Shown in pieces: positions 48,501 to 64,000 of a stretch of DNA of 64,000 bases. The position numbers and the translations under genes are program-made. This stretch comes from Macrostomum lignano (taxonomy: Eukaryota). Each line of letters begins with the position of its first letter. The first letter of the stretch is position 1. Below the pieces are notes generated by a model. It was not told the DNA's origin. It searched no databases and saw nothing but the letters and a program-made list of their open reading frames with translations. The DNA lies in NCBI GenBank assembly GCA_002269645.1, contig NIVC01000001.1, positions 2,232,001 to 2,296,000 of the forward strand. Direction: 5' to 3'.

Positions 48501-51500
48501 TCTTAACCCTAAACACTAACCTAAGGCCGAAACACTATCCTTTTCCTAAAGCCTAAAAATTAACTGAAATTCTAAACATGAACATAAACCCTGAACCACA
48601 GAACCCTAAGCACTAACCTAAACCCTTAACACTAACCTAAACCCTAAACACTCACTTAAACACTAAACACTCACTTCAACACTAAACACTAACCTGAAGC
48701 CTAAACACTAACCTGAAGCCTAAACACTAACCTGAAGCCTAAACACTAGCCTAAACCCTAAACACTAACCTAAAGCCTAAACACTAACCTAAACCCTAAA
48801 CACTAGCCTAAACCCTAAACACTAGCCTAAACCCTAAACACTAGAATAAACCCTAAAAACTAGCCTAAACCCTAAACACTAACCTAAACCATAAACACTA
48901 GCCTAAACCCTAAACACTAACCTAAACCATAAACACTAGCCTAAACCCTAAACACTAGAATAAACCCTAAAAACTAGCCTAAACCCTAAACACTAGCCTA
49001 AACCCTAAACACTAGCCTAAACCATAAACACTAGCCTAAACCCTAAACACTAACCTAAACCATAAACACTAGCCTAAACCCTAAACATTAACCAAACCAT
49101 AAACACTAGCCTAAACCCTAAACACTAACCTAAACCATAAACACTAGCCTAAACCCTAAAAACTAACCTGAAGCTTAAAAACTAACCTGAAGCCTAAACA
49201 CTAGCCTAAACCATGAACCACAGAACCCTAAACACTAATCTAAACCCTAAACACTAACCTGAAGCCTAAACACTAACCCAAACCCTAAACACTAACCTGC
49301 GAGTAAACCCTAAACAACTCGACTAAACCCTAATAATTCCCTCGAGATTTACTCTGAGAGATGGAATTCTGCGGCCAAACTAATATACCTCTAAGTGATT
49401 ATCTTTCAGTAAGTGTAAGTAACCAAGTTAAATTAAGCTACACCAAGAGGTCGCTTACAGTCAGGAAACAGGCCATTATGCAGTGGAGTCCGCTTCAACA
49501 ACAAGCTGGCAACCTTAATAGTCTTGGGCTTGTACTGGTGCAGGTGCTCAATCAGCTTGCTGAGCGTGTGGCCGGTGTCAACAATGTCCTCAACTACTAG
49601 CACGGTCTGCAATTAAAAATGGTAATTTATACAAGTCAGCAAAGACAGGATCACAGCTACTAGAATTAACTAAACTAACCTTATTAGCCAGAACTTCCAA
49701 ATCGTAGAGCTTCATAATGCTCACACTGCCCGTTGACTGGTCATTCTGAAAATTAGCCGGTTTGATTTGAGTTAGAAAAAATGAGAGTCGTTGCAGGTAA
49801 CACAGGTAAAATAGGATCCAGCAGTGACTCCAGACGACTCTACAAGGACAAGATGTCACCGTACAAGTCGTGAAAGAGTCGCCTAAGAGTTAATTGGAGG
49901 CGTTTTGATTGTCTGCGACTTCTGAAACGAAGCACTTTTATAATGACTCTGGGGCCGCAGAGTCGTGTCTGAGGCGTGCTGGAGTCGCTGCAGAATCTGC
50001 ATAATCACTGAGTTGCGTCTAAAGTGCATTTGCGCTCAGATAGTAAAATAATGAGATGGGCCACTCAGCACATTTGCGTGTAAGCTACTTTTAGTTCAGT
50101 AGTAGGTTAAACAGAAGCATTTTATGCTATTTTTACTTTTCACTTTTCCACACTACCCCAGACCGCCCCACCCCAATTTTTATTGCCTTTTACGAATTCC
50201 AGCCTAGATCTGCCATGTACATTTCAGTGGACTGACTAATGTACATTATTGCTGAACCAATTAGCAAGCTGTTTACGTCTGCAAGCTTGGGCTTCTAAAC
50301 TTATCAAACTTATTTCAGCTGCCTTTATCTTTAATAATAAACAATATAAAAACTGCTCGCTGAACTGAAGCAATGCAGAGTAAAGCGTCTTGATCAAGGA
50401 CACAGATTGTTCTAGCGGTATCTGGAATCGAATCCCCGACCTTCCAAGTAGAAAGTTGTTTTACTAAGTAAGCATATATGCCTGAGTGGCTCATCTAGTT
50501 CTAGGAAAGCACTAACAGTCCATTCTGAGGACTGCATGAAACCATTTCTGCCGATAGAAATCTCCCCGTGAGCAAACCTGGTAGCTTTTAGCGCGAATGA
50601 AATGACTAGAAATCTCCCCGTGAGCAAACCTGGTAGCTTCTAGCGCGAATGAAATGACTAGAAATCTCCCCGTGAGCAAACCTGGTAGCTTTTAGCGCGA
50701 ATGAAATGACTAGAAATCTCCCCCCTGTGAGCAAACCTGGTAGCTTTTAGCGCGAATGAAATGACTAGAAATCTCCCCCCTGTGAGCAAACCTGGTAGCT
50801 TTTAGCGCGAATGAAATGACTAGAAATCTCCCCCCTGTGAGCAAACCTGGTAGCTTTTAGCGCGAATGAAATGACTAGAAATCTCCCCCCTGTGAGCAAA
50901 CCTGGTAGCTTTTAGCGCGAATGAAATGACTAGAAATCTCCCCCCTGTGAGCAAACCTGGTAGCTTTTAGCGCGAATGAAATGACTAGAAATCTCCCCCC
51001 TGTGAGCAAACCTGGTAGCTTTTAGCGCGAATGAAATGACTAGAAATCTCCCCCCTGTGAGCAAACCTGGTAGCTTTTAGCGCGAATGAAATGACTAGAA
51101 ATCTCCCCCCTGTGAGCAAACCTGGTAGCTTTTAGCGCGAATGAAATGACTAGAAATCTCCCCCTGTTTAGGAGTTGGCTTACATGTACGAGTGTACTTT
51201 TCATTCACCTACGCGTAACTTTCATAGCAGAGATTTTGATACGTACGTTTCAGCCCCAGCCCCCATTTATAATGTTCAGCAGCACCCACCCCATTTATTT
51301 AAAATTATTGCAATATATAGTTATCAGCCTCTCCAGAGAGAGTGCGCACGCTGGTTGTTTTGTTCGGTTGGCTAGTAGCCGAAAAATAGTCGCTTACTGC
51401 GAAGACTCAATTTATTGAATGAACCATCAAAACATCTGGTAGCAGAGCGTGGTTCTACTTGTGGTTCTACTTGTGGTTCTACTTCATTGGTAAAAGATGT

Positions 51501-54500
51501 CTGATGAAGAAGCAGAGATGCAAGAACAAGTGCCGGAGGGAGACAGCCGTCTCATTTCGCTGAAGGCCAGAAAAGCGGTCGACAAGTGCGCGTTCACGAA
51601 GCAGCGGAATCGTCTACTGAAGGTATTGGGCTCGGACGGAGCTACTTTAGCGGACGTGGAACCGCTGGCCGGCACTCTGGATGACCACTACGAGCGAGTT
51701 AGTGCGGTGCTACAAGCGATTCTGCCCGAGGTCGTCGGGAATCTACCAGTGCAAGTCCAGACAGTAAAGGAGTTGGAAAAGCTGGAGACTGAGTACGGTG
51801 AGATTGTAAATTTGCTGAGAGAATTGCGCAAGAGGGAACGAGAGGTGCGACTAGAGTCGAGGGAGATCGAGCAGAAAGAGATGCGACAGAAGGAGTTGGA
51901 GGCAGTCAGGCGGCAGCGGATAGAGATGGAGGAGGAGGAGCGCAGAATGCAGCAGGAGTTTGCAGAGAGGCAGCGCGAGTTAGATGTCAGATTGGATGCG
52001 CTAAGACTGGCAGAGACGTCAGCGAGTGCAAATGATCAATTGTACTCCTCTCAACTACGGGTAGAAGCGGCCGTCCAATCGCAAGCTGCGTACTCAGTAC
52101 CAGTCGCCAACCCCATGGTTCAAGCCGACCCTTCAGTCAACCCCTTAATTGGGGGAGGGTCAGATCAACTAAGGAGCGCTGAGCAAGGGGGTGAGAGAGT
52201 AAAGGCCGGAGAAAAATCAATACCACCCACCCCAACTGGCGGCAAGTGTGACCACGCTGATTCTAACCAACCCCGCGGACAGCTAGGTATCCAAGCTATG
52301 TACGGTGGAGCTAATTCGCCAATTGGGGCTTCACCGGCCGCCGCAGCAGAATGTACAGCGAAAGCTTGGGCTGAGGAAAGAATCGGTCAGGATATGTGGA
52401 GGCAGTTGCAGAGAGTTGCGATACCGGTGTTTAGTGGAGACAAACGGGAGTTTGAAGGATGGCGGGCGGCTTTCTATGCCTGCGTGCATGCCTCGCCATC
52501 TTCAGAAGCCTATAAGTTGTTGCAATTGCGCCAGTCGCTGCGAGGAGAGGCATTAAAACTTGTTGCGAATCTTGGCTACTCGGAGTTCGCCTACAAAGCG
52601 GCTCTGGAAAGGCTTGAGCGGGAGTATGGTGGAGAGAGACGAAGACTGATGCTGGCACTGGAGGACTTGGATAGTTTCCAACCTATTCAGATAGAGAATG
52701 CAAGTCAATTAAAAAAGCTGGCCGACTTGCTGGATGTTACGGTAGTTAATCTACAGGCTGCAGGGCGAGAGAGTGAGCTAAGCAACAATGGACTTATGTA
52801 CTTGAGAGTGCAAAAGAAGCTGCCAACCGAAACCCTAGCTCGTTTTCATCGGTGGATCGGAGAAGCTAGGAAAGAAGATTCGCTCAGAACGTTGCATCGA
52901 TGGCTTCTGACGGAGGCAGATTACATGACAGTAGCGTGTGAGGCGGTAAGAGGCGTGGCTTCTTCCGGTGAGACCGGACGGCACGACAGTGTAAAAGCCA
53001 AGAAAACTGTTTCCCGAGGGGTAGCCGCAGCACGCTCGTTTTTTGTGAAGACGAATGATTCGAATAGCCAAAACAAAGAACAGGCGGAAGGGCGAAAAGG
53101 TTGTGGTCTCTGCGGAGAACAGCACGGAGTTTGGAGCTGCCCAAGGTTTCAACGAATGGAACCTGGAGCCAGATGGGCGATGGTTCGTGACAAGCGCCTG
53201 TGCTTCTGCTGCTTGGGAGCAAACCATCTAGCCGGTGCGTGCAAGCGAGCGAGAGTGTGCGGTGTTGATGGCTGCAAAGCAAACCATAATCGGCTGCTGC
53301 ATCAACGAGGGCCGGCGGCGACAACGGCGAATCCGCATGAAGGGGGGTCGCCCAAAACGATCGAAAGACCAAAGTCCTTCCAGGAGAAGAAGAGCACAGT
53401 TCAAGAGCCGCAAGAGGCATGCACTTTACTGGCCAGAACATCGCCGTCAATAGCGCTGAGGACTGTGCCCGTGATTTTATCCAACGGCGGTCGGGAAGTC
53501 CGAGTGAATGTCTTGCTGGACGACGCTAGCACCCGGTCGTACCTGAACTCTGACGTTGCAGCGGAACTCGGCTTGGAAGGCAACCTCGAACCGATGACGG
53601 TAAAGGTTCTGAACGGCCAGGTGAGCACCTTTCAGACGGTTCCGGTTGAGGTCGACATCCGCAGTCTGGACGGCGCCTTTCGTGCCACAGTTACGGCCCA
53701 CACAACTGAGAAAGTGACCGGTGGGATGGAAGCCGTAGATTGGAGCCAGCTTGCAAAGCGTTGGGCTCATCTGAGGGGCGTGCCGTTCGACAAAATTAAA
53801 GGGAAGCAGACTGTGGATATGCTCATTGGTGTGGACAATGCAGACTTGCACTTTGCCTGTCGCGAAGTAGGTGGGCAACCTGGAGAGCCGATTGCCAGAC
53901 TGACGCCAATTGGGTGGACCTGCGTTGGACCAGTGAATCAAGTAGGAACTGCAGAAGAGCAGCAGCAGCAGACATTCTTTACGGTGACGGCGGAGAACGA
54001 GGCATCTGATCTTCTGCGGAAGATGTGGGAGATCGATGAAGTGCCAGATGGAGGACAGCAGGCCAGAATGTCCGCTGAAGATCAAAAGATCGTAGAAGCG
54101 ACACGAGCATCCTTGAAGATGGAGAACGGCAGGTTTCAAGTGGCGATTCCTTGGAAAAAGAATCCGGAAGAACTACCTATGAACAACGAAGCTGCCCTAC
54201 AGCGTCTCGTCAGCACAGAAAAGCGCTTGCTGAAGAACCCGGAGCTAGCGAAGGCGTACCAGGCTGTGATAGACAAGCATCTGGCAAAAGGCTATGTGCG
54301 GGAGGTCGGCATCAGCGAGCCAAGTCAGGCTGGCCAGTGGTTCTTGCCGCATTTCGCGATAGTGCGGGCCGATAAGGAGACGACCAAAGTTCGAATTGTG
54401 TTTGATGCAGCGGCTCGGAGCAATGGGGTCTGCCTAAATGACACCATTCATACGGGACCGAAGTTGCAGCAGGATTTGCTAAAGGTGCTCCTACGGTTCC

Positions 54501-57500
54501 GGAAGCATCCCGTGGCGCTAGCAGCCGACATCGAGGAGATGTATCTGAGAGTTCGAATTGCGCCGGAGGACAGAAGATTTTTCCGATTTCTGTGGCGAGA
54601 CTTAGACTTGAAGCAAACGCCGAAGAGCTATGAGTTCTGCAGTGTGGTATTTGGCGTAAACTGCTCTCCGTTTCTGGCTCAGTTTGTGGCACAGGAGAAT
54701 GCGCGACACTATCAGCAACAGCTGCCGCTGGCGGCCAACACCGTGCTGCATTCCACTTATATGGACGACAGTCTAGACTCCGTAGAAACCGTTGGCCAAG
54801 CGGTGAAACTCTTCCAACAACTCGTAGAATTATGGAGCAAGGCAGGGATGCGAGCTTGCAAATGGATGTCGAATTCGTTAGAAGTGCTGCAACACGTTCC
54901 AGTCGAGGACCGCGCAGAACGCGCCGAGTTGCTATTGAAAGGTGAGGCCCGAACCGCTAAGGCGCTTGGAGTGAATTGGAATGCGAAAGAGGACGTCCTA
55001 GGAATTTCCATCAGCGAGTCGAATGCTAGCGGCAAGGTGATGACGAAGAGACTGCTTTTGCGCGGTGTGGCCGAGGTGTTTGACCCCTGTGGCTTCCTAG
55101 CTCCGGTAGTTATCACAGGAAAGATAATGCTGCAGTTGGCATGGCAACAAGGTGTTGGGTGGGATGAAGCGTTGGATCCTGAGTTGGCTGATCAAGCGTT
55201 TCAGTGGACCAGTGAGCTCTCCAAAGCTACGAGACTAGCCGTGCCTCGGTGTCTGCGTCCAGACAACGGATCCATCGAACTTCACTCGTTTGTAGACGCA
55301 TCGCAAGAGGCCTACGGAGCCGTCGTATATCTGCGGAGCGAAACGATGAGTAAGACGACGGTCCGTTTCGTTGCTGCAAAGGCTAAGGTAGCACCATTGA
55401 TGGCGGTGAGCATCCCTCGACTGGAGTTGATGGCGGCAGTCCTAGGACTTCGGCTCGCAAGGGCAGTGGCCGAGGCGTTGGAGATCGCGATTGAGTCTGT
55501 GGTGTTTTGGAGTGACAGTCACAATGTGCTTTGGTGGATTCGCAGGCAGAGTAGAGCGTTCAAGCCTTTCGTTGCGAACCGAGTCGCCTTCATCCAGCAG
55601 CAGGTGCAGCCAAATCAATGGCGGTACGTTCCAACAGGTCTGAATCCAGCGGATGTGGCATCCCGTGGCTGCAGTGTGCAAGAGCTGATGGACAACGAGC
55701 TGTGGTGGAACGGCCCTGGATTCTTGGCGAGGTGCTCAAACGATTGGCCAGAAATGCCGATTCCAGTTGCGCCAGAAACTACTGAGGCGAATACCCGTCG
55801 AAGAGAGCTAGCAAGCATCCAGAAGCGTTGTGCAGAGCCCGTATGTCTGGTCACCACCGATGAAGAAGACAAGACAGGCTGGCGACTCAAACCAGAGCGA
55901 TTCTCTAGTTTCCATCGACTGCAGCGCGTCTTCGCTTGGGTGTTGCGGTTCATTCGGAACTGTCAGACGGAGAAGTATCAGCGGAGCGGCGGTGAGCTGT
56001 TGGTGGATGAGCTCGAGGAGGTCGAGGAGCGTTTGGTAAGGTTAGCTCAGGAGGAAGCGTTCAAGACGGATACAGTGAACGAGAAGAAGCTGCGGTGCTT
56101 GCAGCCGGTACGTGATGCAGCAGGAGTCCTACGAGTGGATGGCCGGTTGAAATTCAGGCCACAGGCGCCATTTGCAGCAAGACATCCATCTATTTTGCCG
56201 CGGAAGCATTGGATCACCAAGCTGATCATCAAACAATATCACGAGCAGCAGAGCCATGGTGGGACTAACCAAACTCTGGCGGCGCTGTCAGCCAAGTATT
56301 GGGTTATCTGTGCTCGGGAAGCTATTCGCGAGTGGGAGGTTGAATGCGCTGTGTGCAAGAGAGAGAAAGCTCGTCCCATCGTAAAACAGATGGCGCCACT
56401 GCCTGATGCCCGTGTCGCAGGATCCTTAAAAGCCTTCACGAACGTAGCCGTCGACATGGGAGGGCCGTTCGTCACTATTCAAGGCCGATTTAAGAAGAGG
56501 CAGAAACGCTATTTGGCGCTGTTCACATGCCTCGAGACGCGAGCGGTACACCTCGAGATGACCTACAGCCTTGACGCGGACTCTTTCTTGAACGCCTTCT
56601 ACCGAATGGTGAACAGGCGTGGCTTACCCAAGGCTATGTATTCTGACAACGGTGGCAACTTTGTAAAAGGTGCAGATGAACTGCGACTTCTGGAGGAGCT
56701 GGACAGGACAAGGATCAGTCGCGAGACATCCAAGCAGCGAGTCAAGTGGAACTTCCAGCCGCCAGCCGCCCCGCACTTTGGTGGAGCCCACGAGGTGATG
56801 ATTCGGGCTGCGAAGCGAGCGCTACACGCGATTCTGGGCAGCGCAGATGTCACCGACGAGGAGCTTCAGTCAGCGATCACTGGAGCGGAGGCGCTTATCA
56901 ACTCGCGCCCCATCACCTATCAATCGGCGAATCCGAGAGACGAAGAGCCACTAACGCCAAACCATTTCCTGCACGGTCAAGCTGGTGGACAATTCGCGCC
57001 GGATGTGCCCGACGACGTCGCGGCTGACCCGAGGCGGCGGTGGCGGCGCGTCCAAGAACTCGTGAGGCACGTCTGGCGACGCTGGATGCGCGAATGGCTG
57101 CCAGGGTTGCAGCCGAGAGCCAAGTGGGCGGGACCGCAGCGTGATTTACAGCCAGGTGATGTCGTTCTCGTCATCAAAGCAGACTCACCGCGGGGACACT
57201 GGCCGGTGGGACGAGTAGTCGAAGTCTACCCAGGTTCAGACAATCGAGTCCGGGTGGCCAAGGTCCAGGTCGGTGGGACGGTATTTGTGCGGCCTGTGAG
57301 CAAACTGTGCTATCTCGAGTGAGAGGAGTTGATCATTTGCTTAAGAACTGTTTGTTTTCTTTTCCGGACTTTTCCGAGTTTACGCTGAGTTTTCAAATTG
57401 TTTGTACTGTATCGTGTGCGTTCAGTAGGCTTTCTGCCAGTTTTGGGCTTTTCAAGCCGTTGCCTTTTTGATTATTGGTTGTGTCTGTTTTTGTTCATGG

Positions 57501-59049
57501 TTTTTTTTGGGATCAGATTTTTTTGGAGCGCAGTTGGCGCATTTGTTTTTCCTTTGAGTTTGAGCTGTTTGAAGTTTCTGTTAAGTTACGGTGATGGGTT
57601 TTTTCTGTCAACCATTTTCGACTTTATTAAAATTGCGAGTTTAAGCTGAGTTGCAAATTTTTATATTTTTTGATGTTTAGTGGTAACTTATTTCAGTTTG
57701 CGGTCTTGCGCATTTTCATTGTTTTCATTTGCGAGTCTTGGTGGCGGGTGCCGAAACATCTTTTCAGTTTGGCTTTTGAGCTCTTTTGAGCCCTCACGCT
57801 TCTCGTGCTGTTCCCAGGCGTTGTATGTTTTTTTTTGCTATGGTCATAGTTTGTCCGTTCGGTTACTAGGTACTCAAGTTCAGTGTTTCCGGTCTTTGTT
57901 GCTGACATTGCTCTGTCAGGAAGGGGGGAATGTTTAGGAGTTGGCTTACATGTACGAGTGTACTTTTCATTCACCTACGCGTAACTTTCATAGCAGAGAT
58001 TTTGATACGTACGTTTCAGCCCCAGCCCCCATTTATAATGTTCAGCAGCACCCACCCCATTTATTTAAAATTATTGCAATATATAGTTATCAGCCTCTCC
58101 AGAGAGAGTGCGCACGCTGGTTGTTTTGTTCGGTTGGCTAGTAGCCGAAAAATAGTCGCTTACTGCGAAGACTCAATTTATTGAATGAACCATCAAAACA
58201 CCCCCCTGTGAGCAAACCTGGTAGCTTTTAGCGCGAATGAAATGACTAGAAATCTCCCCCCTGTGAGCAAACCTGGTAGCTTTTAGCGCGAATGAAATGA
58301 CTAGAAATCTCCCCCCTGTGAGCAAACCTGGTAGCTTTTAGCGCGAATGAAATGACTAGAAATCTCCCCCCCGTGAGCAAACCTGGTAGCTTTTAGCGCG
58401 AATGAAATGACTAGAAATCTCCCCCCTGTGAGCAAACCTGGTAGCTTTTAGCGCGAATGAAATGACTAGAAATCTCCCCCCCTGTGAGCAAACCTGGTAG
58501 CTTTTAGCGCGAATGAAATGACTAGAAATCTCCCCCCTGTGAGCAAACCTGGTAGCTTTTAGCGCGAATGAAATGACTAGAAATCTCCCCCCTGTGAGCA
58601 AACCTGGTAGCTTTTAGCGCGAATGAAATGACTAGAAATCTCCCCCCTGTGAGCAAACCTGGTAGCTTTTAGCGCGAATGAAATGACTAGAAATCTCCCC
58701 CCCGTGAGCAAACCTGGTAGCTTTTAGCGCGAATGAAATGACTAGAAATCTTCAAAGACTTGTGACAGCAGTTCTTGCTCTGCATCCGATCTGTGAGATC
58801 GGTAAAGAACTTGAATCCTCCTTTGAGAACGCAGATTGCGTGCAGACCCTCCTCAGGATCGCAGCTGGCCTGCAGGTCCTGGCTGATCTCCTCTGCCATG
58901 CGTTCAATGCGATCCAGAACGAGGCCGTAGGGGATCACCACGTTGGAGATGTAGGGCGCGTAGTGGGCTGGGTAGCTGAGCGACTCCAGCGGCAGCACTG
59001 GCGGCTCATCTGGTATCTGGGGCGAGTGCACAGGGTATCTGGATTGTGA
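45540..59049 (-). CDS. HPRT1: Hypoxanthine-guanine phosphoribosyltransferase; exons 59049-58714, 49745-49680, 49606-49459, 48271-48195, 45596-45540 (227 aa plus an initiator not in these exons)
   Basis: ICVLKGGFKFF, FIRAKSYQ|NDQSTG, VLVVEDIVDTG (PRPP loop), KVASLLLKRTP, VGYALDYNENFRDL, HICQISDEGKKKF*. All introns GT-AG with matching phases (0, 0, 1, 0). Confidence 0.94.
45680..48002. repeat. 26-bp minisatellite (TGCATCCAACTGAAACTCATTTCCAA)n in HPRT intron 4
   Basis: Direct reading; internal higher-order duplications. Confidence 0.95.
48470..49335. repeat. 19-bp telomere-like minisatellite (TAAACCCTAAACACTAACC)n in HPRT intron 3
   Basis: Units contain CCCTAA. Confidence 0.9.
50409..50500 (-). 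mobile_element. Degenerate tRNA-like/SINE fragment in HPRT intron 1
   Basis: Minus-strand B-box GGATTCGATTCC (50424-50435); rest degenerate. Confidence 0.25.
51165..51434 (+). repeat. 5' LTR (270 bp)
   Basis: TGTTTAGG...CAAAACA; same sequence at 57931-58200. Confidence 0.97.
51378..51421 (+). other. Spliced-leader-like segment in the 5' LTR (second copy 58144-58187)
   Basis: GCCGAAAAATAGTCGCTTACTGCGAAGACTCAATTTATTGAATG versus recalled Macrostomum SL GCCGTAAAGACGGTCTCTTACTGCGAAGACTCAATTTATTGCATG; 28/29 identity over the 3' core. Confidence 0.8.
51437..51454 (+). promoter_or_regulatory. Primer binding site complementary to the 3' end of initiator tRNA-Met
   Basis: TGGTAGCAGAGCGTGGTT, 2 nt after the LTR. 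Its complement AACCACGCTCTGCTACCA resembles the metazoan tRNAi-Met 3' end (...CTCTGCTACCA). Confidence 0.8.
51497..57322 (+). CDS. BEL/Pao Gag-Pol polyprotein, 1941 aa
   Basis: Gag (IPVFSGDKREFEGWRAAF), three Cys/His knuckles (CGLCGEQHGVWSC, CFCCLGANHLAGAC, CGVDGCKANHNRLLH), protease LLDDAS, RT YMDD, RNase H FVDASQEAYG, integrase HHCC plus DDE (VDMGGP, SDNGGNF, HFGGAHE) and WRRVQ...WRRW C-terminal domain, in PR-RT-RH-IN order. Confidence 0.97.
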   Translation: MSDEEAEMQEQVPEGDSRLISLKARKAVDKCAFTKQRNRLLKVLGSDGATLADVEPLAGTLDDHYERVSAVLQAILPEVVGNLPVQVQTVKELEKLETEYGEIVNLLRELRKREREVRLESREIEQKEMRQKELEAVRRQRIEMEEEERRMQQEFAERQRELDVRLDALRLAETSASANDQLYSSQLRVEAAVQSQAAYSVPVANPMVQADPSVNPLIGGGSDQLRSAEQGGERVKAGEKSIPPTPTGGKCDHADSNQPRGQLGIQAMYGGANSPIGASPAAAAECTAKAWAEERIGQDMWRQLQRVAIPVFSGDKREFEGWRAAFYACVHASPSSEAYKLLQLRQSLRGEALKLVANLGYSEFAYKAALERLEREYGGERRRLMLALEDLDSFQPIQIENASQLKKLADLLDVTVVNLQAAGRESELSNNGLMYLRVQKKLPTETLARFHRWIGEARKEDSLRTLHRWLLTEADYMTVACEAVRGVASSGETGRHDSVKAKKTVSRGVAAARSFFVKTNDSNSQNKEQAEGRKGCGLCGEQHGVWSCPRFQRMEPGARWAMVRDKRLCFCCLGANHLAGACKRARVCGVDGCKANHNRLLHQRGPAATTANPHEGGSPKTIERPKSFQEKKSTVQEPQEACTLLARTSPSIALRTVPVILSNGGREVRVNVLLDDASTRSYLNSDVAAELGLEGNLEPMTVKVLNGQVSTFQTVPVEVDIRSLDGAFRATVTAHTTEKVTGGMEAVDWSQLAKRWAHLRGVPFDKIKGKQTVDMLIGVDNADLHFACREVGGQPGEPIARLTPIGWTCVGPVNQVGTAEEQQQQTFFTVTAENEASDLLRKMWEIDEVPDGGQQARMSAEDQKIVEATRASLKMENGRFQVAIPWKKNPEELPMNNEAALQRLVSTEKRLLKNPELAKAYQAVIDKHLAKGYVREVGISEPSQAGQWFLPHFAIVRADKETTKVRIVFDAAARSNGVCLNDTIHTGPKLQQDLLKVLLRFRKHPVALAADIEEMYLRVRIAPEDRRFFRFLWRDLDLKQTPKSYEFCSVVFGVNCSPFLAQFVAQENARHYQQQLPLAANTVLHSTYMDDSLDSVETVGQAVKLFQQLVELWSKAGMRACKWMSNSLEVLQHVPVEDRAERAELLLKGEARTAKALGVNWNAKEDVLGISISESNASGKVMTKRLLLRGVAEVFDPCGFLAPVVITGKIMLQLAWQQGVGWDEALDPELADQAFQWTSELSKATRLAVPRCLRPDNGSIELHSFVDASQEAYGAVVYLRSETMSKTTVRFVAAKAKVAPLMAVSIPRLELMAAVLGLRLARAVAEALEIAIESVVFWSDSHNVLWWIRRQSRAFKPFVANRVAFIQQQVQPNQWRYVPTGLNPADVASRGCSVQELMDNELWWNGPGFLARCSNDWPEMPIPVAPETTEANTRRRELASIQKRCAEPVCLVTTDEEDKTGWRLKPERFSSFHRLQRVFAWVLRFIRNCQTEKYQRSGGELLVDELEEVEERLVRLAQEEAFKTDTVNEKKLRCLQPVRDAAGVLRVDGRLKFRPQAPFAARHPSILPRKHWITKLIIKQYHEQQSHGGTNQTLAALSAKYWVICAREAIREWEVECAVCKREKARPIVKQMAPLPDARVAGSLKAFTNVAVDMGGPFVTIQGRFKKRQKRYLALFTCLETRAVHLEMTYSLDADSFLNAFYRMVNRRGLPKAMYSDNGGNFVKGADELRLLEELDRTRISRETSKQRVKWNFQPPAAPHFGGAHEVMIRAAKRALHAILGSADVTDEELQSAITGAEALINSRPITYQSANPRDEEPLTPNHFLHGQAGGQFAPDVPDDVAADPRRRWRRVQELVRHVWRRWMREWLPGLQPRAKWAGPQRDLQPGDVVLVIKADSPRGHWPVGRVVEVYPGSDNRVRVAKVQVGGTVFVRPVSKLCYLE
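57931..58200 (+). repeat. 3' LTR (270 bp)
   Basis: Directly follows PPT AGGAAGGGGGGAA; matches the 5' LTR by eye. Confidence 0.97.
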
Positions 59050-59927
59050 CTGCAGGCTGTTATGTGTGAATATGTGAATCTTAAAACAAGCAATGACAAT
59101 ACAACTGTGTACAGGAATTTTTTATTTTAAAAAAAAGTTTAATGCAATTCCATTTGTGTATTAAAATAACAAATTTATAAGAACAAAAATATCCTAACTA
59201 TACTAGGTCTATTTTCTAATATTGGGTTGCAGTGCTTGGTATAGCTTGCCCCCACCTTCAAAAATTTTCTGGATCTGTGCCTGGATATGGCAACTGTCTA
59301 TGACTCTATAATGCAAAAACTTATAGAAATGGCAGCCATGTCTCTAATAGTGCTTAGGTCTATACTTATAGACATGGCCACAATTTCTATAATTTTAGAG
59401 CCTATAGACACATTGGCAGTGTCCCATAGTCCAGATCATGGCAGGTGTACGCCGGAATGAAATTTCCTATTTTTTCAACTTTAAGCCAATGTAAAATTAA
59501 AATTTTTTATGCCAAGTCTACAGTTGTTTGTATGCCAATATTTTTAAAGAAAAAATAATTTTAGAACTACAGGAGTTTTACTGAACTTTAAAATGACTGT
59601 TCTTTGCTAAATTTCAGTTATTGCTCATTTTTTGTTTTAATTTTGTTCTTTTTCTTAGAAATTGTAATAATCCAATATACTAAAAATCAAAACTATGTAC
59701 CTACCTATCTATAGGAACCTTTGTTTAACTTGACTTGGTGTGAGTGTTGAATTATAAGTGCTACAAATTCATTTATAAATTCAATGAGAGCTAGCCTAAA
59801 TGTAAACACACTGGACTACTAATGCAGCAACCGGCATTTGAATCTTAGTAGTGTAAATAAAAGTAGCATAATTTTTTTATTGAAGGCTTTTATTAAAGGA
59901 CTAATTAAAAAGACCTGGATTATGGCT

Positions 59928-60585
59928 GTTGATAAACCAAGGATTATTGCACTTGATAAACCAAGGATTATTGCACTTGATAAACCAAGGATTGTTGCAC
60001 TTGGTAAACCAAGGATTACCATGCTTGATAAACCAAGGATTTGTAGTGACTGTGAAATGAAAAAGGTAGAGCTAGGCGGTGGTTTGCCCTTGCTTGCTTC
60101 TTTGTTTGGCACTTGAGTTGCTCGAATATCAAAGATGCTAGGAGCAGATGCTAGTTTAGCTACTGTATATTTATACTATAATTTGTCCTTCCAGAAATTT
60201 CTAGAATCATTTTAGTGCGGTAAAACAAACTGTATAGTAAGTATCGTACGTACGGTATTCATATTTTGTATGATGATGAATTACAGTATAGTAAATAAAT
60301 ATTTATTGAGTAGAAATATTTACTACGAGATTAGAAATAGCTAGATAAAGAATTTTCTAGAATTTAACTCGTACTATATTGCAGAAATTTCTGGAAGTAA
60401 ACATCATACGGTATAGAACTTTTGCGAAGGTCACTACAGATTATTGCACTTGATAAGCCAATGATTATTGTACTTGATAAGCCAAGGATTACTGCACTTT
60501 ATAAACCAAGGATTATTGCACTTGAAAAGCCAATGATTATTGCACTTGATAAGTCAAGGATTATTGTACTTTGATAATAAGGAAT
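59928..60585. repeat. 24-bp repeat (GATAAACCAAGGATTATTGCACTT)n in two clusters (about 59928-60040 and 60440-60585)
   Basis: Direct reading. Confidence 0.85.
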
Positions 60586-63500
60586 ATTGCACTAGATATT
60601 CATTCATTAGATATTCACTAGATATTCATTCATTCGCGCTATAGTGCAAGGAATATTGCACTATATAAGAAAACAATTATTTCACTAGCTAAGAAGCTGA
60701 TTATTGTGCTATCTAAAAAAGAGATTATTGTCCTAGCTAAGACATGGATTGTTGCACAACTTGAGAAATCAATTATTGCATTAGCTAAGGTAACATTTGC
60801 ACTAGATACTTGTTGTCTAGTAGATCATACATGCCTAACACCTGTGTAACCTGTCCTAACCGGATGGGTGAAATGGCTGCCAGCCAAGGTAAGTCACAAA
60901 ATTGAAAATAGGAAAAACAAAAAAGTGGGTGAAGAAAGAAAGGAGAAGAGGAAAAAAGTAAAAAAGGAGAGAAAAGAGAGAGAGGGGAAAGAGGAGAGAG
61001 AAAGAGAAAGAGAAGAAAAGAGAAAAAGGCAAGAAAAGTCATATACAAAGTAAAAATTAAGTTGCAATCAGGGGAACTAAGTTGCAATTGAGAGGAACAA
61101 ATTCACAAATCAGGACAAAACTAAGTCACACCAGATGGGTCAAATTTTGAGGTTGGGCATGTATGTAATGGATGCTTGCTCTTAAGGGATAACTTACTAT
61201 TTGGAAGAGGGGGATACAGGCTACATGTATTGGATTCTTTCTATGCAGGGATGCTTGCTATTTAGAGATTCCTGCTATCTACAGGATGCTTGCTATCTGC
61301 AGGATTCTTGCTATTTAGGTGGATGCTTCTATTTAGGGGATGCTTGCTATCTTGGGAATATTTTCTATTTAGGAGGGTGTCTATTATCTTTGTGAAAGCT
61401 ATATTTTGTTGTCTGTTTGTTAATTTTAGAAAAAGAGATTCATAGCAAATATCATTGTCTGTGACAATTTTACATGAATAAGGTAATTTTTAAAAGTGAA
61501 GAAAAAATTGTTTTTTTAAGAAAATGTGCTTTTTTAATTGTTTTCCATGAACTATTTTTGCTCCTTGCTTATTGGCCACCCCAAAAGGGGGCCACACTAG
61601 ATGGCTAGGTTTTTTTAGTTTTGTTTCCAATTATTTTTGAAAGAGCTTTTGTTAGTGAATATTTATCTACATCATATAGGCCCTATATTAGGCCTGAACT
61701 TGGCCATTTTTGTATGCCAATTGTGTAGACTTAATATTGAGCCTAAAACTTCTATATGCCAAATGTACACCAAGATTGTCAGCAAGAACAAAAATATGCC
61801 AGAATTTTCTGGCATAAAGGCCACTTTCTAGACAATGGGCAGTGTCTATAATGTAGAATGTATCTTTGGGTCACTGGGTAAATAGGGTGTTTTTGTACAA
61901 AAGAAGGTAAATTTCAAAATGACCTAATATACAACAATGTACAACAGAGAAAGAGCCAAAGCAAAAATGACAAAAAATGATGCAAAGCAAAAGATTTTTT
62001 AAACAATATAATAACAATAATGTTATTATTATGCAACACTTAAAATAGCTAAATATGTTTGATAGACTTAGCAAATTTCAAATTATTTTACAGTTAGGCC
62101 TAGGCCTAGGCCTACTATAAAAAATAGAACATTTGCTAAAAACAATTAACAAGACTTTCTTAATAGTGCCTTTTTGAAATTATTTAATATGTTGGCTTGG
62201 CATTGGCATTGCTTTAGAAGTTTAAGCCTAGTTGTTACTTTTAGGGAGTTTTAGCTAAGCATTTTAGTCACATTATATGATGATCATTGTTGCTAACACA
62301 AGTATATAAGGTGCATTTCTCAGTTTGCAACTATGTCTAAGTTGCAAACCTTTTTATTAGCTACCTCAATTTTTTGGTCATGGTGGAATCGTTTACATTT
62401 GAAGCCTGATGAAGTTTTCAATTTCAGCAAGGAAAAAAACTGCTAGATATGTTTAGCCTACTTTTGAGGGAGCTAACTGGAGCTTCAGCAAGTGTTCTGT
62501 GCACAAACTGAGTGCAGTTTGAAAATCATACAATCGCAACTGCTGGCTGACCTGGCCAATCTGGCCACCGTAAATTGTGGTGGACCAGGGCAGGGAAAGT
62601 TGCAAAAATGCCCACCCCAAAAAATATAGATGTAGGCCTAGTATATAGTACTAGGCCCTAATTAGATGACTAATAAATATATATTTTTATAATAAATAAT
62701 AATAACTGAGACTATAGATGCCTATGTTTTATGTACTTTATCTTTCGATATAGGCCTAGCAAACGTCATAACGTGAATGTAAAACTTGAATTTGACTGCG
62801 TCTAGACGCTAACTTTGTTGCCTGACTTACAATGATGGCCGACTTCTGGGGTCCTTGTTGTGCCATAGTTGTTTGTTTCAAGACTGAATTGAATGCTTAA
62901 GCAATAGAAACAGAAAATAGCGGAAATCTAAATAAAATAAAGTGGAATATTGACGTAAGTACGATACTAAATGGGACAAAAAGGGCGCGGGCAAATTAAA
63001 AAATTATATTAAAAATGAATATTGAAATTGTGCTTTTCCAAGAAATAATAATGTTTTAAATGAATGCCTATCTATTTGTGAAGCAATTCTGAAATAAAAT
63101 TAAATTGAGGGTTCTTTTTATTATCATCGCATGTAACTAAAATCAAGCTAGAAGTTAATGTTGCTATTCTATATTTTAACACTTATCTGCGATTGATAGG
63201 ATTACTATTATTTTAGTAACGAGGAAATGTCTCAAAGATAGATCAGAGCCAAGGACCACTGTATATAACTGTTATATACACTGGTGCTTGATCAGAGCTA
63301 CAGCTGATATCTCCCTAACTGTGTTGTAATTGTACCGAAGATATTGAAACGCTTTGCTGATGATCTATGAGTTGGAGCTGGTGCAGGCTCAGCCCATATT
63401 TTCAGTCAGCCCATCTTATTTATACAAAATATTTTGTATCCAGTCTTAAATTGTAAGAACAACTAATTGCTTATGTTTTTTGGATGCGTGCATCAAGGGT

Positions 63501-64000
63501 CGATGACGACACATTTATGAAGATTAGTCGGAGTCAGCTAGCAAACAACCCACATACATGTATGAGCCCACAAAAGCAAACTCTAGCTATGATCGATGTA
63601 CTCGTACATGTAGGTTTACTGCAATTAAGCTCTTTTCCAACACACCTCCGGCCACTCAAAAAAACGAAAAGCGAGCTAGCTTCTTGTTCATGTACGTACT
63701 GCAAGTAGCTGTAAGCGCGCATGGTTAGCAAAAATTTTGAAAGATTTAAGTTTTTTGATCAGCTACTCTATCCCAAGGACGACTATTGAAGATTAAATTA
63801 TACATGTATATGTGCATGTAAAGTTAGTCCTTGCATTCTTTTTCTATACACAAATAGTGTGCTAAATACATGTGTAAATGTGTAAATAATTTTGGCGGTC
63901 GTAAATATGTAAATTACATATAAGAATCAAATTGAAGGATATGTTAATCCGTCTGAACAGCTTGCATAAACCAAGATCCGCTTATAAATCAGTATGATTA

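What the first reader, a model, noticed from the sequence alone, without database searches (positions are those of the whole stretch)
51378..51434. BEL/Pao retrotransposon whose LTRs contain a copy of the host spliced-leader exon
Seen: both LTRs carry GCCGAAAAATAGTCGCTTACTGCGAAGACTCAATTTATTGAATG (51378-51421; 58144-58187), ending 13 nt before the LTR end and 15 nt before the PBS. Knowledge (recalled, not looked up): the Macrostomum lignano SL exon is GCCGTAAAGACGGTCTCTTACTGCGAAGACTCAATTTATTGCATG. The 3' 29 nt match 28/29, the GCCG start and terminal ATG are kept, and the 5' hairpin part has drifted. No GT donor or Sm site follows, so this looks like a processed SL from an mRNA 5' end, not an SL RNA gene. 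Inference: the element captured an SL during reverse transcription and fixed it as its R/U5 region. Its RNA may then begin with an SL mimic (translation, export or evasion of silencing), or be trans-spliced at the TAG at 51376-51378 or 51387-51389 with the LTR copy supplying strand-transfer homology. I know of SL-array-targeting non-LTR elements in trypanosomes and relic SLs in dinoflagellates, but not of an LTR family with a built-in SL.
Basis: partly seen in the sequence, partly recalled or inferred. Interest (0 to 1): 0.92.

Follow-up and report, generated by a model that had tools for sequence, protein, structure and literature searches.

The report
Host spliced-leader copy inside retrotransposon LTRs
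A young, intact BEL/Pao retrotransposon of a Macrostomum-type flatworm carries in both long terminal repeats a processed copy of the host's trans-spliced leader exon, most likely left when a trans-spliced copy of its own RNA was reverse-transcribed; I found no earlier report of this, and whether the copy now does anything is untested.

Summary
Both 270-nt LTRs (51165-51434 and 57931-58200, 100% identical) carry a 44-nt sequence at 51378-51421 and 58144-58187. It matches the published 45-nt Macrostomum spliced leader (SL) at 39 positions with one 1-nt gap, and 28 of 29 in the 3' part.

The element is a complete BEL/Pao retrotransposon: a likely 5-bp target duplication in a 55-bp satellite, an initiator-tRNA-type primer binding site, a polypurine tract, and one open 1941-aa gag-pol frame.

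I recovered two genuine SL RNA genes from public data. The LTR shares only the exon with them. It lacks their promoter, GTAAG donor, Sm site and three-hairpin fold, so it is a processed exon, joined to the last 13 nt of U5.

The best reading is that an SL-trans-spliced element RNA was reverse-transcribed and an irregular first strand transfer fixed the SL in the LTR. This is inferred, not shown.

A TATA-like box 64 nt upstream suggests the RNA starts about 30 nt before the copy, so the copy is probably not a cap-adjacent SL mimic.

A relative with 61% Pol identity and the same primer binding site has no SL. No other family copy was reachable, so conservation and function are untested.

Interest is moderate to high: a new variant of known kinds.

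The parts
51160..51164 (+). Left copy of the likely 5-bp target-site duplication (CCCCC)
   Evidence: The satellite unit has 6 C here. The flanks carry 5 and 6, so 11 = 6 + 5. The homopolymer leaves 4-6 bp possible.
51165..51434 (+). 5' LTR, 270 nt, TGTT...AACA
   Evidence: 100% identical to 57931-58200.
51314..51320 (+). TATA-like box (TATATAG), 64 nt upstream of the SL copy. It overlaps AATATA, one of only two poly(A)-signal-like hexamers on the plus strand.
   Evidence: Motif scan. Its role is inferred.
51353..51378 (+). T-rich tract ending CTAG/TAG, immediately upstream of the SL copy. Candidate ancestral trans-splice acceptor.
   Evidence: Sequence. The M. lignano acceptor motif is [T/C]TNCAG (PMC8629364), and this site is TAG, not CAG. 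Inference only.
51378..51421 (+). Processed SL exon copy in the 5' LTR (44 nt; 28/29 in the 3' part; 5' 16 nt diverged)
51418..51423 (+). AATGAA hexamer, created by the single C-to-A change in the SL 3' part plus the first two U5 bases. Possible variant poly(A) signal.
   Evidence: Speculative.
51419..51442 (+). Upstream mini-ORF from the SL's terminal ATG (MNHQNIW*), in the gag frame but closed by a TAG inside the PBS
51422..51434 (+). Last 13 nt of the LTR (AACCATCAAAACA), read as the native U5 end
   Evidence: GAACCAT also sits next to the PBS of relative L001, and GAAC..AAAA in L004. The match is short and only suggestive.
51437..51454 (+). Primer binding site TGGTAGCAGAGCGTGGTT (initiator tRNA-Met type)
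   Evidence: Identical over 18 nt in L004. TGGTAGCAGAG is shared with L001 and L002. The tRNA assignment rests on my knowledge of the metazoan tRNAiMet 3' end; no tRNA gene was available to test it.
51450..51485 (+). Three tandem 12-nt units (TGGTTCTACTTG) in the leader, starting inside the PBS
51497..57322 (+). Single open gag-pol frame, 1941 aa. Motif order: CCHC knuckles, protease LLDDAS (aa 673), RT YMDD (1088), RNase H VDAS (1266), integrase D/D (1653, 1716).
   Evidence: Homologs carry PF03564, PF05380, PF00078, PF17921, PF00665 and PF18701.
57918..57930 (+). Polypurine tract AGGAAGGGGGGAA, abutting the 3' LTR
   Evidence: The same tract precedes the L004 and L003 LTRs.
57931..58200 (+). 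3' LTR
58144..58187 (+). Processed SL exon copy in the 3' LTR
58201..58205 (+). Right copy of the target-site duplication
50555..51164 (.). Left part of the 55-bp satellite array that received the insertion. It continues at 58201-58751.

Best explanation
The 44-nt segment is a DNA copy of the mature, already spliced host SL exon. It is built into the R/U5 leader of a recently inserted, apparently competent BEL/Pao LTR retrotransposon.

Most likely origin (inferred):
1. An ancestral element RNA was SL-trans-spliced at an acceptor 13 nt upstream of the U5 end. That left SL + 13 nt + PBS + gag-pol.
2. This RNA was packaged. Minus-strand strong-stop DNA ran to the SL's capped first base.
3. An irregular first strand transfer, with little or no homology, placed that DNA next to the acceptor region of the 3' LTR copy.
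4. After one cycle both LTRs read U3 - (R) - T-rich tract/AG - SL - 13 nt.

The lineage then kept transposing while the SL copy picked up 6 changes.

Today the copy is probably transcribed as an internal part of the 5' leader, starting about 30 nt upstream, without an SL-type cap. I treat it as a tolerated relic whose 3' 29 nt may be under some constraint.

Shown: SL identity, exact exon limits, absence of SL-gene features, element integrity and youth.
Inferred: trans-splicing of the element's own RNA, the transfer mechanism, the transcription start, and the present role.
For: - SL identity is far beyond chance and agrees with the published SL.
- The copy starts at the SL's first base and stops at the exon's last base (ATG). 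In the true genes L009 and L011, GTAAGA, an Sm-like ATTTTTAG and two hairpins follow. In the LTR, AACCATC... follows.
- LTR versus true genes: upstream and downstream similarity is at chance level, while the two true genes' introns align at score 80 against a null maximum of 23.
- True genes fold with z = -3.0 and -4.1. The LTR equivalent gives z = -0.1.
- The SL sits 15 nt from a PBS shared with relatives. That is where a trans-spliced RNA still able to prime reverse transcription would carry it.
- A T-rich tract ending in AG directly precedes the copy.
- TE transcripts are known to be SL-trans-spliced: about 30% of Hydra TE Iso-Seq reads (PMC12220107) and Cer1 in C. elegans (PMC3315495).
- Identical LTRs, a target duplication and an open 1941-aa frame show the SL-bearing LTR is compatible with recent transposition.
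- Relative L004 has the same PBS and polypurine tract but no significant SL, so the SL is a lineage-specific acquisition.
Against: - Only one element copy is available, so there is no family-wide or transcript evidence.
- The presumed acceptor is TAG, not the preferred [T/C]TNCAG.
- The strand-transfer step needs a non-homologous or 1-nt-homology jump.
- No canonical AATAAA lies on the plus strand of the LTR, so the R/U5 limits are unknown.
- The skew of differences (5 of 6 in the first 16 nt, p about 0.02) fits a neutral relic less well than some constraint on the 3' part.
- The host species is not independently established, so some of the 'drift' could reflect a variant host SL.
Confidence: 0.6

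Rival explanations
1. Co-opted leader element. The 3' 29 nt of the SL copy is kept by selection because it helps the element's RNA. Possible benefits: translation or stability through factors that recognise the SL on host mRNAs; shielding from small-RNA silencing, since the host cannot target its own SL; or supplying the 3'-end signal through the AATGAA created by the one substitution.
For: 5 of 6 differences from the SL lie in the first 16 nt and only 1 in the last 29 (binomial p = 0.024, Fisher p = 0.017). The diverged part is the one that pairs with the intron in the true SL RNA and so has no partner here. The single 3' change creates one of only two poly(A)-signal-like hexamers in the LTR. 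The lineage stayed active after capture.
Against: One copy only and no expression data. The copy is probably internal, without a trimethylguanosine cap. Its ATG creates an upstream mini-ORF that should hinder gag translation rather than help it. The skew could also come from reverse-transcription errors near the cap or from a variant source SL.
Confidence: 0.22
2. SL mimic at the 5' end. Transcription starts at the copy's first G (51378), possibly because the SL acts as an intragenic promoter element as in nematode SL RNA genes. The element RNA then begins with an SL look-alike, and the SL is the R region.
For: The copy is full length from base 1. From my own knowledge, the Ascaris SL sequence is an internal promoter element of its SL RNA gene.
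Against: The TATA-like box is 64 nt upstream, not about 30. There is no detectable similarity to the upstream regions of two true SL RNA genes. The 5' part of the copy, next to the supposed start, is the least conserved part.
Confidence: 0.08
3. Capture from a foreign RNA. During strong-stop synthesis, reverse transcriptase switched from the element RNA onto a co-packaged host SL-mRNA. On this reading the element's own RNA was never trans-spliced.
For: Template switching onto co-packaged cellular RNAs is a known route of host-sequence capture by retroelements (general knowledge). About 30% of host genes carry the SL (PMC8629364).
Against: The junction falls exactly at the exon's last base, with no host mRNA body sequence after it. 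The 13 nt that follow resemble the U5 ends of relatives. A switch at exactly that base would be a coincidence.
Confidence: 0.12
4. It is an SL RNA gene or pseudogene, or the element is an SL-array-targeting retroelement that picked up flanking SL gene sequence.
For: Only the presence of the exon sequence.
Against: There is no donor, Sm site, hairpins or promoter similarity. The copy is inside the LTR near U5, not upstream of U3. The insertion site is a 55-bp satellite unrelated to the SL. No other SL sequence is in the window.
Confidence: 0.02

Closest known systems
Relic DinoSL sequences at the 5' ends of dinoflagellate retrogenes (Slamovits and Keeling 2008, from my knowledge; PMC6050394 and PMC5585692 listed)
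   Same: A DNA-encoded copy of a processed SL, left when a trans-spliced RNA was reverse-transcribed and re-integrated.
   Different: Those are host genes copied in trans, often with tandem 5'-truncated relics. Here the SL is full length and single. It sits inside both LTRs of an autonomous LTR retrotransposon of an animal and is propagated with the element.
SL trans-splicing of transposon transcripts (Hydra TEs, PMC12220107; C. elegans Cer1 subgenomic RNA, PMC3315495)
   Same: Retroelement RNAs are substrates of the host SL machinery. This is the first step of the proposed origin.
   Different: In those cases the SL is added to RNA only and is not encoded in the element's DNA.
SL-gene-targeting non-LTR retrotransposons (SLACS, CZAR, CRE in trypanosomatids; NeSL-1 in C. 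elegans; from my knowledge)
   Same: A physical association between a retroelement and SL sequence.
   Different: Those insert into SL RNA genes, and the SL belongs to the target rather than the element. Here the target is an unrelated satellite and the SL is internal to the LTR.
Acquisition of host-type cis elements by M. lignano LTRs (heat-shock elements, PMC12801592)
   Same: LTRs of the same host genus gaining host-derived or host-like functional sequence.
   Different: Those are transcription-factor sites in U3 that arose independently several times. This is a 44-nt RNA-derived block in R/U5.
Genuine Macrostomum SL RNA gene (109 bp, PMC8629364; examples L009 615-722 and L011 1589-1696)
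   Same: The exon sequence (39 of 45 positions).
   Different: No donor, intron, Sm site, fold or promoter similarity.

Membership tests
BEL/Pao LTR retrotransposon | Two LTRs ending TG...CA, flanked by a 4-6 bp target duplication | tested here: met
   270-nt LTRs, 100% identical, TGTT...AACA. The CCCCC duplication is inferred from the satellite unit.
BEL/Pao LTR retrotransposon | PBS next to the 5' LTR and a polypurine tract next to the 3' LTR | tested here: met
   PBS at 51437-54 and polypurine tract at 57918-30, both shared with relative L004.
BEL/Pao LTR retrotransposon | gag-pol with the order protease - RT - RNase H - integrase | tested here: met
   Motif positions aa 673, 1088, 1266, 1653/1716 in one open frame.
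BEL/Pao LTR retrotransposon | Pao-type peptidase A17 (PF05380), with DUF1759 gag and DUF5641 | tested here: met
   Met indirectly. All full-length homologs at 45-66% identity carry PF05380, PF03564 and PF18701. The window protein itself was not scanned against Pfam.
BEL/Pao LTR retrotransposon | RT groups with BEL/Pao in a phylogeny | not tested
   No tree was built. PMC12801592 reports five Bel/Pao families in M. lignano.
SL RNA gene | SL exon followed by a GT donor | tested here: not met
   ATG|AACCAT in the LTR against ATG|GTAAGA in L009 and L011.
SL RNA gene | Sm-binding site and a three-hairpin fold | tested here: not met
   Fold z = -0.12 for the LTR against -3.0 and -4.1 for the true genes. 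No downstream similarity.
SL RNA gene | Shared upstream promoter region | tested here: not met
   LTR against L009 and L011 upstream regions at chance level. The two true genes are themselves only weakly alike upstream, so this test has little power.
SL RNA gene | Match to a curated RNA family | not testable with these tools
   Rfam 15 recognises neither the true genes nor the LTR copy.
Relic (retroposed) spliced leader | Copy bounded exactly by the exon's first and last bases, joined to transcript body sequence | tested here: met
   The five SL-mRNA contigs show the same ...GCATG|body junction.
Relic (retroposed) spliced leader | Derived from trans-splicing of the carrier's own RNA | not testable with these tools
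   Needs RNA data. It is inferred from the position 15 nt from the PBS and the acceptor-like tract upstream.
Relic (retroposed) spliced leader | Tandem truncated older relics upstream (the dinoflagellate pattern) | tested here: not met
   Best upstream match scores 18 against a null mean of 17.6.
SL-array-targeting retroelement (SLACS/CZAR/NeSL type) | Inserted within an SL RNA gene or array | tested here: not met
   Inserted in a 55-bp satellite, with no other SL sequence in 64 kb.

The most novel reading that the evidence does not exclude
The SL block is a working part of the element. As R/leader it makes the element RNA share 28/29 nt with the 5' end of roughly 30% of host mRNAs. That could help its expression or hide it from small-RNA silencing. 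It could also give reverse transcriptase a homology bridge between host SL-mRNAs and the LTR. cDNAs of host genes could then switch onto the element's 3' LTR and be integrated as retrogenes carrying a U3 promoter, which would make this a dedicated route of gene retroposition in a trans-splicing animal.
Probability: 0.12. Interest if true: 0.88.

Novelty: new variant of a known kind. Interest (0 to 1): 0.62.

Why it matters
It is direct DNA evidence that an SL-trans-spliced retrotransposon RNA can serve as a replication template in an animal, and that the product can stay transpositionally fit.

It gives a dated internal marker, since the SL exon is invariant across the genus. That marker can be used to measure how fast an LTR drifts.

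It also raises testable questions: whether SL sequence inside a 5' leader affects translation, 3'-end formation or silencing, and whether SL homology promotes recombination between host mRNAs and the element.

M. lignano has transgenesis, SL-read maps and 3'-end maps, so these tests are practical. In the full-text searches I ran I found no paper describing an LTR with a built-in SL.

Tried and rejected
- Exact look-up of the 1941-aa product: not on record.
- Three protein searches: no member of the same family. The best were 66% and 61% identity, from one JGI sample.
- Relatives L001, L002 and L004: their LTRs carry no significant SL. An eye-catching GACGATCTCGT..TGCGCAGTCT in L004 U5 scored at chance.
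- Viral-contig scans for the SL and for Pol relatives: nothing.
- Extra degenerate SL relics upstream in the LTR (CCCCATTTAT.. motifs): not significant.
- Similarity of the LTR to SL gene promoter or intron: chance level.
- Colinear similarity of the LTR tail, with or without the SL removed, to L001, L002 and L004: none. The idea that the 13-nt tail is native U5 therefore rests only on a 7-nt motif.
- Leader RNA folding: no more stable than shuffles.
- Rfam: no family for this SL RNA.
- PDB sequence search of the polyprotein: no hit.
- tRNA scan for a host initiator tRNA to test the PBS: none in the window or the loci.
- Supplements of the M. lignano LTR papers: no sequences held.
- Wasik et al. 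2015: could not be fetched under the PMC id I tried.
Full report
**What is there.** Window 51165-58200 is a 7,036-bp LTR retrotransposon. Its two 270-nt LTRs (51165-51434 and 57931-58200) are 100% identical and end TGTT...AACA.

It sits inside a 55-bp satellite array (50555-51164, resuming at 58201). The satellite unit has six C at the insertion point, and the flanks carry five and six. That gives a target duplication of most likely 5 bp.

Two bases after the 5' LTR comes TGGTAGCAGAGCGTGGTT. From my knowledge of the metazoan initiator tRNA-Met 3' end, I read this as an initiator-tRNA primer binding site. A polypurine tract, AGGAAGGGGGGAA, abuts the 3' LTR.

One uninterrupted 1941-aa frame (51497-57322) carries, in order, CCHC knuckles, a protease motif, YMDD, an RNase H DAS motif and integrase D/D motifs. 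Full-length homologs at 45-66% identity all carry the Pao peptidase A17, DUF1759, DUF5641, RVT_1 and integrase domains. The BEL/Pao call is therefore sound. Identical LTRs and an open frame say the insertion is very recent.

The recalled SL is correct. The published M. lignano SL and the 45-nt M. cliftonense and M. hystrix SLs are identical to it (PMC8629364, PMC5173321, PMC10468722 suppl. Table S3).

A scan of public metagenome contigs for a 22-nt SL core gave independent sequence evidence:
- five transcript contigs that begin with the SL and continue, after ...TTGCATG, into different mRNAs;
- one genomic contig, L009, with a genuine SL RNA gene.

A scan of prokaryotic genome bins found a second genuine gene, next to a U1 snRNA gene, on a contaminant contig L011.

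SL against LTR aligns with 39 identities, one 1-nt gap and five substitutions, scoring 58 against a shuffle maximum of 23. The last 29 nt match 28 of 29.

**Exon only.** In both true genes the exon is followed by GTAAGACACCG..., a hairpin, an Sm-like ATTTTTAG and a second hairpin. The two introns align at score 80 against a null maximum of 23, and both RNAs fold far better than shuffles (z = -3.0 and -4.1).

In the LTR, similarity begins at the SL's first base and ends at its last (ATG). What follows is AACCATCAAAACA and the PBS. Upstream and downstream similarity to the true genes is at chance level, and the equivalent 108 nt has no special fold (z = -0.1).

So this is a copy of the mature, spliced exon. 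It is not an SL RNA gene, a pseudogene or a piece of an SL array. No other SL-like sequence is in the 64 kb.

**How it probably got there (inferred).**
- The position argues for the element's own RNA. The SL is joined 13 nt before the U5 end and 15 nt before the PBS. An RNA trans-spliced there still carries the PBS and all coding sequence, so it can be translated and can prime reverse transcription, but it has lost R.
- Strong-stop DNA made on such an RNA ends with the complement of the SL's first base.
- An irregular first strand transfer onto the 3' LTR copy would yield exactly U3-...-SL-13 nt in both LTRs.
- The sequence just upstream of the copy is a T-rich tract ending CTAGTAG. It looks like an acceptor, though it does not match the preferred [T/C]TNCAG of M. 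lignano. The layout acceptor-SL-exon is what a transfer anchored by the 13-nt homology would leave.
- TE RNAs are known SL substrates in Hydra and C. elegans.
- A switch onto a foreign SL-mRNA is the main rival for the origin. It would need the switch to fall exactly at the exon's last base.

**What it probably does now.**
- The only TATA-like box (51314-51320) is 64 nt upstream of the copy. The RNA therefore most likely starts near 51343-51348 and carries the SL copy internally. It would not be a cap-adjacent mimic.
- The SL's ATG opens a 7-codon mini-ORF, in the gag frame but closed inside the PBS. This is not an obvious benefit.
- No AATAAA is present on the plus strand. The two signal-like hexamers are AATATA, which overlaps the TATA box, and AATGAA, which is created by the single substitution in the 3' part of the SL. 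This is a lead only.
- Five of the six differences from the SL lie in the first 16 nt (p about 0.02). That stretch pairs with the intron in the real SL RNA and has no partner here. The skew fits mild constraint on the 3' part, but it could also come from reverse-transcription errors near the cap or from a variant source SL.
- With one copy I cannot separate these. I rank 'tolerated relic' first and 'co-opted leader' second.

**Relatives.**
- The closest element found is L004 (Pol 61% identical, from a JGI sample). It is a pol-LTR-gag contig with the same polypurine tract and an identical 18-nt PBS, but its 353-nt LTR has no significant SL.
- More distant relatives L001 and L002 also lack it.
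- The SL is therefore a lineage-specific gain, not a clade feature.
- No copy of the window's own family could be reached.

**Comparison and novelty.** The nearest known things are:
- relic DinoSLs on dinoflagellate retrogenes: same mechanism class, different carrier;
- SL-trans-spliced TE RNAs, where the SL is not DNA-encoded;
- SL-gene-targeting non-LTR elements, where the SL belongs to the target.

Full-text searches, including the most detailed M. lignano LTR survey (PMC12801592), turned up no LTR with a built-in SL. I file this as a new variant of known kinds.

**Caveats.** The host species is assumed from the SL and from the repeat-rich composition, which fits M. lignano. Only one copy was seen. 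All functional statements are inferences.

Noticed in passing
L011 1121-1283 and 1589-1696 (JAGQZA010000190.1): A contig filed under a Flavobacteriaceae metagenome-assembled genome is animal DNA. It carries a U1 snRNA gene (Rfam 151.7 bits) and a genuine Macrostomum-type SL RNA gene, so the bin is contaminated.
   Followed up: partly
L009 601-722 (Ga0302322_100095745): A genuine SL RNA gene in a metagenome contig. It is preceded by a partial duplicate of its own first bases (GCCGTAAACTCTTT). A Na/K-ATPase beta-like ORF lies downstream.
   Followed up: partly
window 51450-51485: Three tandem 12-nt units (TGGTTCTACTTG) start inside the 3' end of the PBS. They might extend pairing with the primer tRNA or be slippage products.
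   Followed up: no
window 51437-51454; L004 4255-4272; L001 about 2456; L002 about 2112: All four BEL relatives use a PBS beginning TGGTAGCAGAG (initiator tRNA-Met type). The window and L004 share all 18 nt, which hints that their hosts are related.
   Followed up: partly
window 51411-51416 and 58177-58182, minus strand: The complement of the SL's TTTATT is a canonical AATAAA. Every SL copy therefore places a poly(A) signal on the antisense strand of the LTR.
   Followed up: no
window 50555-51164 and 58201-58751: The 55-bp satellite that received the insertion contains CTGGTAGC, the same 8-mer as the junction with the PBS. This is probably chance.
   Followed up: no
window 1-50500 and 58800-64000: The window is dominated by dozens of unrelated tandem-repeat arrays (periods 4-149 bp). 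No tRNA and no Rfam match at gathering threshold was found, which fits a repeat-rich flatworm genome.
   Followed up: partly
window 51363-51383: A small inverted repeat, TTCGGTTG / TAGCCGAA, pairs the first bases of the SL copy with the upstream T-rich tract. The T-to-A change at SL position 5 extends it. The leader as a whole is not more stable than shuffles.
   Followed up: partly
L004 3790-4300: This relative is assembled as pol - single LTR - PBS - gag. That arrangement points to a one-LTR circle, a tandem pair or a wrap-around assembly. Its LTR has TATATATT near the 5' end and AATAAA about 95 nt before the end, so its R region is long, unlike the window LTR.
   Followed up: no
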